Positions 21,723 through 23,438 of a stretch of DNA of 64,000 bases are shown piece by piece. The position numbers and the translations under genes are program-made. This stretch comes from Magallana gigas (taxonomy: Eukaryota): the NCBI RefSeq assembly GCF_963853765.1, contig NC_088858.1, positions 7,006,001 to 7,070,000 of the forward strand, given 5' to 3'. A model generated the notes under the pieces. The model was not told where the DNA came from. It did no database searches and saw only the letters and a program-made list of their open reading frames with translations. Each line of letters opens with the position of its first letter. The first letter of the stretch is position 1.

Positions 21723-23438
21723 ATGTTGTCGATAGTAGTATCCCTCTTGTTCCTATCCTCGACTCTTTGTCAGCGCCAATGCGACCCCCGGGATCCAAAC
21801 TGCGTTGACGCATTCCAGGTAGCTGGTGACAATTTTGGCGGGGCAATCGCTGCAGAAATCCCCTATAACAATGTAGCCGACGCTGGTTTCCCCAATGCAC
21901 CCAATACATTTGACACTGTTGCCGTGGTAGGATTCGACAACTTTGATTCTGGCCCTGGAATGCCTCAGGTCCAAGGCATTGAAGTCGTAGGACAGCCATT
22001 TGACGTTCAGTCCGACTTCGGACCTGTCCCGAGAGGAGTTAATATCATTGAAACTAGAGCATTCGATAACGATGAAAACCAAGCAATAATCATCGATACC
22101 AGGGGACCAGTGGACCAGAGACCGATGAACAATGATCTTCAGAACTATCAGCCAAAAATGGACAAGAAAATGGATATTTATCCCGGACAGATGGACAAGA
22201 AAATGGATATTTATCCCGGACAGATGGACAAGAAAATGGACATGTACCCTGGAAAAATCGACAAGAAAATGGATGTCTACCCTGCTAACTTCGATAAATA
22301 TCCCGTGGATAAGTACCCTATGGACAAATATCCAGTTGATAAGTATCCAGTCGATAAATATCCCATGGATAAATACCCCGTTGACAAATATCCCATGGAT
22401 AAATACCCAGTCGACAAATATCCTGTGGACAAATATCCAGTGGACAAATATCCAGTAGATAAATACCCAGTCGATAAATATCCAGTTGATAAATATCCGG
22501 TGGACAAGTTCCCCACTGATAAGTATCCCATGGACAAGTACCCCGTCGACAAGTATCCAGTTGACAAGTATCCGGCTGATAAATATCCAGTTGACAAGTA
22601 TCCAGTTGATAAATATCCGATGGACAAGTACCCTGTTGACAAGTATCCAGTTGACAAATACCCAGTTGACAAATATCCAGTTGATAAATATCCAGTTGAC
22701 AAATACCTAGTTGACAAATATCCAGTTGATAAATATCCAGTTGATAAATATCCAGTTGACAAATATCCAATGGACAAACAAAAGCCAAAATACGACAACA
22801 CATTAGAAAAATACCCTGGTAAGTACGACAAATTCCAGAAATACGACAAATACCCAGGAAAGACACAAGATATCTATCCAGGCAAACTCGACAAGGGATT
22901 CGATAACTATCAAATGGACAAGAAAGGGAACGCATATCCTTCTAAATTAGACAAGACCTACGAACTTTACCCTACCAAAGGATACGACAAGGTCGCAGTT
23001 AGATTCGATGAGAGCGACAAGTACCCTATCGTCGACAAACTCATGAACATTTACCCCACCCAAGCAGACAAAATGATCGATAAATACCAACCCGTCGACA
23101 AGTACCAGCCAAAGTATGAGACCAGGCGGCCAGAGAAATTCCAGAAGGGATCTTACGACAAGTATGTACCTAAGCCAAAATACAACAAAAAATCTTACGA
23201 CACTGGTAAATATAGCAATAAGCGTTACCAGAAGAAGTATGATTACAGCTCTAAGTACCCCAGGAAGTACGATTATCCTGAGCCGACCTCCCGTCCCGTG
23301 TACAGGAGACCCACGGTGACCGAGCCCAGCGTCAACCAACAGGAGTACTACGCCACCCAGCCTCCAGTGAACAGGAGGAGAAACGCACGCAGAATGCAGA
23401 GGCGCCGCCCCTCCAGAAGAAGGTCATCCGGGTACTAA
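21723..23438 (+). CDS. Secreted Asp/Lys/Tyr/Pro-rich repeat protein, 571 aa, with 32 tandem DKYP(V/M) pentapeptides
   Basis: Signal peptide MLSIVVSLLFLSSTLC-Q. Four 11-mers MDKKMDIYPGQ at 22158-22289, then 32 pentamers at 22293-22772 with abundant synonymous codon variation. Arg-rich tail ending RRRSSGY*. Confidence 0.92.
   Translation: MLSIVVSLLFLSSTLCQRQCDPRDPNCVDAFQVAGDNFGGAIAAEIPYNNVADAGFPNAPNTFDTVAVVGFDNFDSGPGMPQVQGIEVVGQPFDVQSDFGPVPRGVNIIETRAFDNDENQAIIIDTRGPVDQRPMNNDLQNYQPKMDKKMDIYPGQMDKKMDIYPGQMDKKMDMYPGKIDKKMDVYPANFDKYPVDKYPMDKYPVDKYPVDKYPMDKYPVDKYPMDKYPVDKYPVDKYPVDKYPVDKYPVDKYPVDKYPVDKFPTDKYPMDKYPVDKYPVDKYPADKYPVDKYPVDKYPMDKYPVDKYPVDKYPVDKYPVDKYPVDKYLVDKYPVDKYPVDKYPVDKYPMDKQKPKYDNTLEKYPGKYDKFQKYDKYPGKTQDIYPGKLDKGFDNYQMDKKGNAYPSKLDKTYELYPTKGYDKVAVRFDESDKYPIVDKLMNIYPTQADKMIDKYQPVDKYQPKYETRRPEKFQKGSYDKYVPKPKYNKKSYDTGKYSNKRYQKKYDYSSKYPRKYDYPEPTSRPVYRRPTVTEPSVNQQEYYATQPPVNRRRNARRMQRRRPSRRRSSGY

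What the first reader, a model, noticed from the sequence alone, without database searches (positions are those of the whole stretch)
21723..23438. Protein with 32 tandem DKYP(V/M) pentapeptides: a zwitterionic Lys-Tyr polymer, candidate DOPA adhesive or tanned-matrix protein
Seen: 22293-22772 encodes exactly 32 pentamers (mostly DKYPV, some DKYPM, single DKFPT, DKYPA and DKYLV). Codons vary synonymously (GAT/GAC, AAA/AAG, TAT/TAC, CCA/CCC/CCG/CCT) while the peptide stays fixed, which points to protein-level selection and not just DNA slippage. Four 11-mers (MDKKMDIYPGQ) precede the array and degenerate DK...YP units follow it, so the pentamer looks like a contraction of an older DK-x4-YP unit. 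Each unit is net neutral (D-K+) with Lys next to Tyr. Known: Lys-Tyr adjacency and Tyr-to-DOPA conversion underlie mussel byssal adhesion (e.g. mfp-1 AKPSYPPTYK). Inference: this is an adhesive, cement or quinone-tanned matrix protein. I do not recognise this exact repeat as a named protein.
Basis: partly seen in the sequence, partly recalled or inferred. Interest (0 to 1): 0.82.

Follow-up and report, generated by a model that had tools for sequence, protein, structure and literature searches.

The report
Oyster secreted DKYPV-repeat structural protein
This is a real, transcribed oyster gene for a secreted, unfolded protein built around 32 copies of the peptide DKYPV; it most likely acts as a cross-linkable building block of shell or cement material, but nobody has tested its function.

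Summary
Window 22293-22772 encodes 32 pentamers (23 DKYPV, 6 DKYPM, and one each of DKFPT, DKYPA, DKYLV). They lie inside a 571-aa ORF (21723-23438, + strand) that begins with a signal peptide. Third codon positions differ among units far more than first and second positions (62/160 against 11/320, p = 3e-23; pN/pS 0.07), so the peptide is under purifying selection.

RNA-like contigs from three studies cover the gene and show a GT..AG intron that ends exactly at the ATG. A public UniRef model from Magallana gigas, auto-named "Adhesive plaque matrix protein-like" and truncated to 223 aa, shows a second isoform. That isoform swaps the poly-Arg tail for a two-Cys tail.

The protein has three charge blocks: an acidic N-terminal block (-14), a neutral array, and a basic tail (+21). 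AlphaFold finds no fold. It is single-copy, and no homologue was found outside the repeat.

It sits in a cluster of secreted low-complexity genes. One neighbour shares its gene structure, its N-terminal Cys motif and its ...SGY end.

My best reading is a mantle-secreted, oxidatively cross-linked matrix protein of the shell framework or periostracum. Larval or adult cement is the main rival. DOPA, tissue and location are untested. I class it as a new member of a known kind, of moderate interest.

The parts
21465..21526 (+). Non-coding exon 1 (the part seen in RNA-like contigs); holds a 9-codon upstream ORF at 21474-21503
   Evidence: contig record 5 of run X1 joins 60 bases ending at 21526 to 21723. 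A loose end in X8 (second study) matches the same exon end. The uORF was read.
21527..21722 (+). Intron 1 (196 nt, GT..AG); its acceptor lies immediately before the start codon
   Evidence: table 5 (joint 21524>21721, cut +2, GT..AG); sequence.
21723..23438 (+). Coding sequence of the main isoform, 571 aa plus stop
   Evidence: Contigs of X1, X5 and X8 cover 21721-23475 in pieces without frame changes.
21723..21770 (+). Signal peptide (about 16-18 residues, MLSIVVSLLFLSSTLC)
   Evidence: Read from the sequence: a hydrophobic core followed by small residues. No predictor was available.
21771..22145 (+). Acidic N-terminal block (residues 17-141) with the C-x-P-x-DP-x-C motif and GFDNFD-type segments; charge about -14, pI 4.05
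   Evidence: Weak similarity to the neighbouring gene's N-terminus (E = 6e-4).
22158..22289 (+). Four 11-residue units of MDKKMDIYPGQ type
22293..22772 (+). Array of 32 DKYP(V/M) pentamers (residues 191-350), net charge 0
22773..23132 (+). Degenerate DK...YP units (residues 351-470), K/D/Y/P-rich, mildly basic
23133..23435 (+). Basic Tyr/Pro-rich tail (residues 471-571; charge about +21, pI 10.4) ending RRRPSRRRSSGY
23367..23457 (+). Alternative 91-nt intron (GT..AG). Removing it deletes the poly-Arg tail and the stop codon and shifts the frame
   Evidence: joining 23366 to 23458 and 23475 to 23622 reproduces 222 of 223 residues of the UniRef protein P0016. X1, X5 and X8 contigs retain this stretch.
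23476..23621 (+). Last intron (GT..AG, 146 nt), holding a (TC)25 microsatellite at 23488-23538
   Evidence: X1 and X8 contigs stop matching at 23475 and depth resumes after 23600. The P0016 sequence crosses this junction. TRF found the microsatellite.
23622..23730 (+). Last exon. It is 3' UTR in the main isoform. In the alternative isoform 23622-23678 encodes AERCGQLPDSIPNCPHDF plus stop. AATAAA lies at 23707-23712
9934..11322 (+). Neighbouring divergent paralogue (gene A): a Gly-rich secreted protein with GFGKGKGFGG repeats, ending RRMASGY
25677..26261 (+). Neighbouring secreted G/F/D/S-rich protein ending RRRGRRRPRY, with the same layout of an intron acceptor just before the ATG (putative)

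Best explanation
This is a gene of the Pacific oyster, or a very close relative. It encodes a secreted, intrinsically disordered structural protein of about 65 kDa with three charge blocks: an acidic Asp/Asn/Gly/Phe-rich head, a neutral (DKYPV)32 core flanked by looser DK...YP units, and a strongly basic Arg/Lys/Tyr/Pro tail. I infer that mantle epithelium secretes it together with the products of the neighbouring low-complexity genes, and that it becomes part of the insoluble organic shell framework or periostracum. In that model the oppositely charged ends dock molecules onto each other, onto acidic or basic matrix partners, and onto CaCO3. The proline-stiffened core presents a Tyr with a Lys beside it every five residues. 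Tyrosinase or peroxidase would then cross-link these residues (DOPA-quinone to Lys, or di-Tyr bonds) and harden the material. Shown here: gene model, transcription and splicing, secretion signal, repeat constraint, charge blocks, lack of a predicted fold, and the gene cluster. Inferred: tissue, final location and cross-linking chemistry.
For: Real spliced gene: a GT..AG joint 21526|21723 and coverage of the whole CDS in RNA-like contigs of three studies, plus a public UniRef protein derived from it. It is not ubiquitously expressed: there were 0 reads in polyA run X21, although the flanking repeat is covered. Purifying selection on the peptide. Of the variants seen in RNA contigs, 8 of 11 are synonymous, and one of the three others turns DKFPT back into DKYPT. 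Charge blocks of -14 / 0 / +21. AlphaFold2 gives mean pLDDT 38 and no secondary structure in the array. Context: at least eight ORFs for secreted low-complexity proteins lie in the 64-kb window, several of them ending in a basic run followed by Tyr. Gene A shares a signal peptide, the Cys-x-Pro-x-Asp-Pro...Cys-Asp-Ala-aromatic-Gln motif, a GFD-rich acidic region, the ...SGY end, an intron acceptor at the ATG and an intron just after the stop. Top RNA-like holders of gene A and of this gene share three studies, one run and one sample. A basic run plus terminal Tyr is the published signature of the pearl-oyster prismatic-layer proteins shematrin and KRMP (PMC3896809). The genome holds at least 20 tyrosinase loci (31 domain hits).
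Against: No tissue, stage or protein-level data could be obtained because run and sample names are coded. The neighbouring genes are not shown here to be shell proteins either. The protein is not Gly-rich (4.3 %), unlike shematrins and KRMPs, and its tail ends ...RRRSSGY rather than RnKmY. No tyrosinase gene is linked; the nearest lies 36 Mb away on the same chromosome. I found no record of it in shell proteome papers, but this is weak evidence: its tryptic peptides are mostly 5-mers plus one 81-mer, and no model of this gene other than one truncated 223-aa entry was found in the protein collections searched.
Confidence: 0.5

Rival explanations
1. It is an adhesive or cement protein, secreted by the pediveliger foot at settlement or by the adult mantle edge when the left valve is cemented. 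Lys-DOPA pairs would displace surface water and ions and then cure the glue, as in mussel foot proteins.
For: Lys sits directly before Tyr in 46 of 68 Tyr. The automatic public name is 'Adhesive plaque matrix protein-like'. [quoted passage not shown] Expression is not ubiquitous.
Against: The main text of the list of 59 pediveliger-specific candidates describes no Tyr/Lys repeat protein. This is weak, because that list used older gene models. Every unit carries an Asp that neutralises the Lys, unlike the strongly cationic mussel proteins. The gene is embedded in a cluster whose members look like shell-framework proteins, not adhesives. The automatic name reflects composition only.
Confidence: 0.22
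2. It is a structural or lubricating protein of some other extracellular material, such as hinge ligament, mucus or an egg or larval coat. It would use the zwitterionic, strongly hydrated array as an extended spacer, with little or no Tyr oxidation. If cross-linking occurs, it could go through Lys (lysyl oxidase) or through the terminal Cys pairs.
For: The array is a perfectly charge-mixed polyampholyte (kappa 0, fraction of charged residues 0.4). That pattern predicts an expanded, soluble chain rather than a sticky one (inference from polyampholyte theory). The alternative isoform has Cys pairs at both ends. The genome has other clusters of secreted low-complexity genes noted by this scan (unchecked).
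Against: One Tyr per five residues has been kept under strong constraint, and a polymorphism restores Tyr in the one Phe unit. This suggests the Tyr itself matters. The basic tail plus terminal Tyr is shared with framework proteins.
Confidence: 0.15
3. It is a member of the plant extensin / proline-rich protein family, or of another known repeat fold such as the pentapeptide-repeat beta-helix, as the Pfam hit suggests.
For: Pfam PF02095 Extensin_1 scores 120.2 bits against a gathering cut-off of 105 over residues 229-374.
Against: The match is confined to the low-complexity array. The array has no Pro-Pro dipeptide and the protein has no SPPP motif. 2347 unrelated proteins from all kingdoms also match the array alone. 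The pentapeptide-repeat family gave no hit at E <= 1, and AlphaFold2 builds no beta-helix.
Confidence: 0.02

Closest known systems
Mussel foot protein 1 (Mytilus 'adhesive plaque matrix protein', decapeptide AKPSYPPTYK repeats)
   Same: Both are secreted, disordered bivalve proteins made of many short tandem Lys/Tyr/Pro repeats, with Lys close to Tyr. A truncated public model of this gene is auto-named after it.
   Different: The unit here is 5 residues, not 10. It has one Pro and an Asp that cancels the Lys charge, so the array is neutral instead of strongly basic. Non-repeat acidic and basic end blocks are present. Adult oysters make no byssus. DOPA and hydroxyproline are untested.
Shematrin and KRMP families of pearl-oyster prismatic-layer framework proteins
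   Same: Signal peptide, repetitive low-complexity core, a basic C-terminal run ending in Tyr (RnKmY signature; PMC3896809), and tandem gene clusters with fast-changing repeats. KRMPs are Lys- and Tyr-rich and are proposed cross-linking substrates.
   Different: There are no Gly-rich XGnX or GGY repeats (Gly 4.3 %) and no Lys/Trp head. The tail ends RRRSSGY rather than RKKKY-type. No sequence similarity was found.
Plant repetitive proline-rich cell-wall proteins and extensins (Pfam PF02095)
   Same: Short tandem units combining Pro, Val, Tyr and Lys, and a formal Pfam score above threshold. These are wall proteins made insoluble by peroxidase-driven Tyr cross-links, which is the same working principle I propose here.
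   Different: There is no Pro-Pro or Ser-Pro4 motif. The gene is from an animal, and the match is compositional. This is analogy, not family membership.
Neighbouring gene A (XP_019918888.2, 'glycine-rich cell wall structural protein-like', uncharacterised)
   Same: Same strand and a similar exon layout, as far as sequence shows. It shares the signal peptide, the two-Cys N-terminal motif, a GFD-rich acidic region, a basic Pro-rich tail ending SGY, and a similar last exon.
   Different: The central repeats are entirely different (GFGKGKGFGG-type Gly-rich against DKYPV). Overall similarity is marginal (best BLASTP E = 6e-4).

Membership tests
Mussel foot protein 1 / adhesive plaque matrix protein | Tandem decapeptide repeats of AKPSYPPTYK type, strongly basic, without acidic residues | tested here: not met
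   Units are pentamers, each with one Asp; array net charge is 0 and pI 6.5.
Mussel foot protein 1 / adhesive plaque matrix protein | Tyr converted to DOPA and Pro to hydroxyproline in the mature protein | not testable with these tools
   Needs protein chemistry. The genome does carry many tyrosinase loci.
Mussel foot protein 1 / adhesive plaque matrix protein | Made in foot glands and deposited in byssus | not testable with these tools
   Run and sample identities are coded. I only know that polyA run X21 gave 0 reads.
Mussel foot protein 1 / adhesive plaque matrix protein | Sequence homology to mussel fp-1 outside compositional similarity | not tested
Only an automatic UniRef name points this way.
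Shematrin / KRMP | Signal peptide and secreted low-complexity repeat protein | tested here: met
Shematrin / KRMP | Gly/Tyr-rich XGnX or GGY repeat domain | tested here: not met
   Gly is 4.3 % of the mature protein, and the repeats are DKYPV.
Shematrin / KRMP | C-terminal RnKmY signature (RKKKY, RRKKY, RRRKY; KRMP RKYKY, RPKKY, RRKY; PMC3896809) | tested here: inconclusive
   The tail is RRRPSRRRSSGY: a basic run and a terminal Tyr, but with SSG in between. The neighbour at 25677-26261 ends RRRGRRRPRY, which is closer.
Shematrin / KRMP | Mantle-edge expression and presence in the prismatic layer | not testable with these tools
   No tissue labels or proteome data were accessible.
Plant extensin / proline-rich protein (PF02095) | Pfam profile score above the gathering threshold | tested here: met
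   120.2 bits against 105, residues 229-374; the match is confined to the array.
Plant extensin / proline-rich protein (PF02095) | Pro-Pro containing units (PPVYK / PPVEK) or Ser-Pro4 motifs | tested here: not met
   0 PP dipeptides in the array and 0 SPPP in the protein.
Pentapeptide-repeat beta-helix (PF00805) | Profile match and a right-handed quadrilateral beta-helix | tested here: not met
   No Pfam hit at E <= 1. The AlphaFold2 model has no strands in the array and pLDDT around 40.

The most novel reading that the evidence does not exclude
An alternative-splice switch gives two forms of one zwitterionic Tyr-Lys polymer. The main form has oppositely charged ends (acidic head, poly-Arg tail) and could assemble head-to-tail by charge. 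The minor form replaces the poly-Arg tail with a second Cys-x(n)-Pro-Asn-Cys loop like the one at the N-terminus, so it could be end-linked by disulfides. In both forms the (DKYPV)32 core would act as a fixed-length, non-collapsing spacer whose Tyr-Lys pairs are later locked by oxidation. This would be a programmable way to set the mesh and curing of an oyster biomaterial. It would also be a new peptide motif for wet adhesives or antifouling coatings.
Probability: 0.12. Interest if true: 0.7.

Novelty: new member of a known kind. Interest (0 to 1): 0.42.

Why it matters
Bivalve shells, periostraca and cements are built from fast-evolving secreted repeat proteins, and few of these have a clear chemical logic. 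This protein has an unusually clean design: one Asp, one Lys, one Tyr and one Pro every five residues, held constant at the protein level while silent sites have drifted to saturation. It is framed by an acidic head and a basic tail. That makes it an easy substrate for testing how Lys-Tyr adjacency, charge neutrality and end-block charge control cross-linking, mineral binding and adhesion. It could also serve as a template for synthetic peptides. The work also shows why standard shotgun proteomics would miss this protein, and it supplies a signature peptide to look for.

Tried and rejected
- **Homologue searches.** The word-indexed search gave nothing for residues 1-150 within full-length candidates and nothing for residues 1-190 alone. 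Residues 351-571 found only the truncated UniRef model of the same gene.
- **Exhaustive phmmer.** The search of 1.84 billion representatives gave 2347 hits. Apart from P0016, every listed hit (the best 150) matches only the array. The seven I read are unrelated low-complexity proteins with repeats such as HAVDKHTVDR, DKGPV, DKPPL and DEYPP. The list shows only the best 150, so weaker true orthologues may be hidden.
- **Exact look-ups.** The full protein is not in the 15-billion-protein collection, and no encoding contig is on record for P0016.
- **ESM Atlas.** It holds the sequence letter for letter. The nearest clusters score below 0.8 and are arthropod cuticle-like proteins, which I treat as leads only.
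- **Other libraries.** The PDB sequence search gave only chance hits at E > 0.03. NCBIfam gave one sub-threshold hit of no meaning.
- **Own genome.** No second copy of the N-terminal or C-terminal parts exists, and gene A has no further copy. The weak hits on contig 8 are an unrelated DDLYPGGTGSP repeat ORF.
- **Literature.** There were 0 papers containing DKYPV or longer pieces of the repeat, and 0 citing gene A's accessions. No paper treats an oyster 'adhesive plaque matrix protein'. The supplements held for two papers (an oyster shell multi-omics study and a larval single-cell atlas) had no matches; a third shell-proteome paper had none held.
- **Linked tyrosinase.** None was found near the gene.
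- **Minus-strand ORFs over the array** (GYLST... and DICQL...). I reject these as by-products of a stop-free repeat, because the splice sites, signal peptide and poly-A signal are all on the + strand.
- **Tissue of expression.** I could not derive it because run, sample and study names are coded.
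Full report
**1.

The + strand ORF 21723-23438 is intact and encodes 571 residues. Bases 22293-22772 translate to exactly 32 pentamers: 23 DKYPV, 6 DKYPM, and one each of DKFPT, DKYPA and DKYLV. 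They are written with 23 different 15-base units. Tandem Repeats Finder detects the array at periods 15, 30 and 45. It also detects the 33-bp unit just upstream, which gives four 11-residue units of MDKKMDIYPGQ type. After the array come looser units that keep DK at the start and YP in the middle, such as DKKGNAYPSKL, DKTYELYPTKGY and DKLMNIYPTQA. Two six-residue forms, DKYPIV and DKYQPV, also occur there.

**2. The peptide, not the DNA, is conserved**

Among the 32 units, third codon positions differ from the consensus at 62 of 160 sites. First and second positions differ at only 11 of 320 sites (Fisher p = 3.4e-23). At the two-fold third positions of Asp, Lys and Tyr, all 34 changes are synonymous transitions and none are transversions (p = 1e-6). 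Pairwise pN/pS among units is 0.069, with silent sites saturated. Variants seen in public RNA-like contigs follow the same pattern. Eight of 11 are synonymous, and one of the three others turns the single Phe unit back into Tyr. This is purifying selection on the repeat peptide.

**3. It is a real, spliced, secreted-protein gene**

RNA-like contigs from three studies (X1, X5, X8) cover the coding region in pieces.
- One X1 contig joins 21526 to 21723 across a 196-nt GT..AG intron, so the acceptor lies immediately before the start codon. A loose end in X8 fits the same junction.
- The contigs stop matching at 23475, at a GTAAGT donor 37 nt past the stop codon. Depth resumes after an AG at 23620-23621. 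An AATAAA follows at 23707-23712.
- All these signals are on the + strand, which disposes of the stop-free antisense ORFs over the array.
- A polyA RNA-seq run (X21, about 1 % of reads sampled) gave no read on the gene while covering a dispersed repeat 1-2 kb upstream. Expression is therefore not ubiquitous.

The protein starts with a typical signal peptide, MLSIVVSLLFLSSTLC.

**4. A second isoform exists**

The only database relative is P0016, UniRef A0A8W8IC30 from Magallana gigas, 223 aa, automatically named "Adhesive plaque matrix protein-like". It begins at Met350, so it lacks the array. Its end differs from the ORF. Joining 23366 to 23458 (a 91-nt GT..AG intron) and 23475 to 23622 reproduces 222 of its 223 residues.

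This isoform loses the poly-Arg tail and ends ...RSPPYLAERCGQLPDSIPNCPHD(F/Y). That ending is a Cys-x9-Cys loop closing in Pro-Asn-Cys, like the N-terminal CDPRDPNC. The X1, X5 and X8 contigs retain the 91 nt, so the poly-Arg form appears to be the main one in those runs.

**5. Organism**

The neighbouring protein at 9934-11322 is in NCBI and UniRef. Its 90 %-identity cluster includes XP_019918888.2 of Crassostrea (Magallana) gigas, "glycine-rich cell wall structural protein-like". The assembly is 564 Mb in 29 contigs. This is the Pacific oyster or a very close relative.

**6. What the protein looks like**

The mature protein is about 65 kDa. K, D, P and Y together make up 53 % of the residues. 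It has three charge blocks:

| Block | Residues | Charge | pI / notes |
|---|---|---|---|
| Acidic head | 19-141 | -14 | pI 4.05; D/N/G/F-rich |
| Pentamer array | 191-350 | 0 | 40 % charged residues; perfectly mixed charges (kappa 0) |
| Degenerate DK...YP units | 351-470 | mildly basic | K/D/Y/P-rich |
| Basic tail | 471-571 | +21 | pI 10.4 |

AlphaFold2 run on the single sequence gives mean pLDDT 38 and no secondary structure in the array. That fits intrinsic disorder, with the caveat that no alignment was available. Lys directly precedes 46 of the 68 Tyr.

**7. Relatives**

None was found outside the repeat.
- Two word-indexed searches of the head found nothing, and one of the tail found only P0016.
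- The exhaustive phmmer search returned 2347 hits. Apart from P0016, every listed hit (the best 150) matches only residues of about 180-380, and those I read have unrelated short charged repeats.
- One hit (P0086, 228 aa, with a hydrophobic C-terminal end that looks like a GPI-anchor signal; that reading is my inference) carries about ten DKYPT/DKYPV units. I take this as convergence.
- Pfam PF02095 (Extensin_1) scores 120 bits against a cut-off of 105 over the array. However, the array has no Pro-Pro dipeptide and the protein has no Ser-Pro3 or longer motif, so this is compositional resemblance to plant PPVYK-type wall proteins, not membership.
- The gene is single-copy in its genome.

**8. 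Genomic context**

The 64-kb window is packed with ORFs for secreted low-complexity proteins:
- 9934-11322 (+): Gly-rich, ends RRMASGY.
- 16401-16760 (+): ends GYY.
- This gene (+).
- 25677-26261 (+): G/F/D/S-rich, ends RRRGRRRPRY.
- 38891-39259 (-).
- 47771-48109 (+): ends RKHHY.
- 55359-55970 and 61127-61693 (-): two paralogues with FDD and GYGKK repeats.
- 61869-62198 (+): a Gly/Tyr/Ser-rich ORF.
- 28369-28902 (-): a thaumatin-domain exon also sits here.

Gene A and this gene share several features. Both have a signal peptide and the motif Cys-x-Pro-x-Asp-Pro-x(1-4)-Cys-(x)-Asp-Ala-(Phe/Tyr)-Gln. Both have a GF(D/N)-rich acidic stretch and a basic Pro-rich tail ending Ser-Gly-Tyr. In both, an intron acceptor lies 0-1 nt before the ATG, a GTAAG donor lies 10-37 nt after the stop, and the last exons are partly alignable. 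The 25677 gene has the same acceptor-before-ATG layout.

I read these as old tandem duplicates whose central repeats have been replaced. That is the known mode of evolution of molluscan repeat-rich shell proteins (general knowledge). The best RNA-like holders of gene A and of this gene overlap in three studies, one run and one sample. This is weak support for co-expression.

**9. Mechanism (inference)**

The most economical reading is a mantle-secreted structural protein of the organic shell framework or periostracum.
- The acidic head could bind Ca2+ or mineral, or basic tails.
- The basic tail ending in Tyr recalls the RnKmY ends of shematrins and KRMPs, which are framework proteins of the pearl-oyster prismatic layer (PMC3896809).
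- The proline-stiffened neutral core would stay extended and hydrated. It offers a Tyr with a neighbouring Lys every five residues to tyrosinase or peroxidase for DOPA-quinone-to-Lys or di-Tyr cross-links.
- The genome has at least 20 tyrosinase loci, none of them linked to this gene.

The array's perfectly mixed charges argue against (DKYPV)n coacervating by itself. Charge-driven assembly, if it occurs, should come from the end blocks.

The main rival is a cement or adhesive role, either in the pediveliger foot or in adult cementation. Tyrosinase and peroxidase transcripts are reported to peak at the pediveliger stage (PMC6337334). The main text of that paper describes no such repeat protein among its 59 candidates, but it used older gene models. 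No model of this gene other than the truncated one turned up in the protein collections I searched, so absence from that list and from shell proteome lists says little. In addition, trypsin turns the array into 29 five-residue peptides and the head into an 81-residue peptide, so shotgun proteomics would hardly see the protein.

**10. Comparison with known families, and novelty**

It works like mussel foot protein 1, shematrin/KRMP and plant proline-rich wall proteins: all are secreted, disordered, Tyr/Lys/Pro repeat polymers hardened by oxidation. It fails defining features of each family:
- it has an Asp in every unit and a neutral array, unlike mfp-1;
- it is not Gly-rich, unlike shematrins and KRMPs;
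- it has no Pro-Pro motif, unlike plant PRPs.

The repeat motif occurs in none of the roughly 8.4 million papers searched, and no paper treats the gene. The gene is, however, already in public annotation under an automatic adhesive-protein name.

I class it as a new member of a known kind, namely lineage-restricted molluscan repeat-rich secreted structural proteins. It has an unusually clean zwitterionic motif and an interesting splice switch at the tail. Interest is moderate. Function, tissue and chemistry remain to be shown.

Noticed in passing
window 9934-11322, 16401-16760, 25677-26261, 38891-39259(-), 47771-48109, 55359-55970(-), 61127-61693(-), 61869-62198: The whole window is a cluster of ORFs for small secreted low-complexity proteins. 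Several end in a basic run followed by Tyr (RRMASGY, RRRGRRRPRY, RKHHY, GYY). Two minus-strand paralogues carry FDD-type acidic repeats followed by GYGKK repeats.
   Followed up: partly
window 23622-23678 and 11486-11560: The last exons of this gene and of gene A both encode, in one frame, a short peptide with two Cys around an Ile-Pro and ending Asp-Phe (ERCGQLPDSIPNCPHDF and NRSCSNKQIPKLCDF). In this gene the frame is used by the alternative isoform. In gene A it is the frame that continues from the stop codon. This may be the ancestral C-terminus.
   Followed up: partly
window 21474-21503: A 9-codon upstream ORF (ATG...TAA) lies in the non-coding first exon, inside the part seen in RNA-like contigs.
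   Followed up: no
window 19789-20766: A roughly 1-kb dispersed repeat. It is covered on both strands by polyA RNA reads and by contigs whose ends run on into unrelated sequence, so the reads probably come from other copies of a transposable element.
   Followed up: no
window 28369-28902 (-): An exon encoding a thaumatin-family domain (Pfam PF00314, E = 2.6e-60) sits inside the cluster of low-complexity genes.
   Followed up: no
window 32947-33315 and 34690-34974, with an N gap at 34166-34302: Two arrays of a 21-bp repeat (ATGCTGATACTTTAACATTAC) lie in inverted orientation on either side of an assembly gap. A 172-bp satellite (4.3 copies) lies at 30650-31376.
   Followed up: no
P0086 (protein from the representative library, 228 aa): An unrelated protein with a hydrophobic C-terminal end (GPI-anchor-like, possibly fungal) carries about ten DKYPT/DKYPV units. 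This appears to be an independent invention of the same pentapeptide.
   Followed up: no
L003 1144-1749 (-) = G000 contig 8, about 18.555 Mb: A 201-aa ORF with about 12 tandem DDLYPGGTGSP units flanked by Asp-rich stretches. It is another acidic Tyr-Pro repeat ORF in the same genome, unrelated to the present gene.
   Followed up: no
proteins P0001, P0005-P0007, P0012 (gene A alleles): Public transcript-derived versions of gene A differ in repeat number (446 against 462 residues from the same start), so repeat-length polymorphism exists in this cluster.
   Followed up: no
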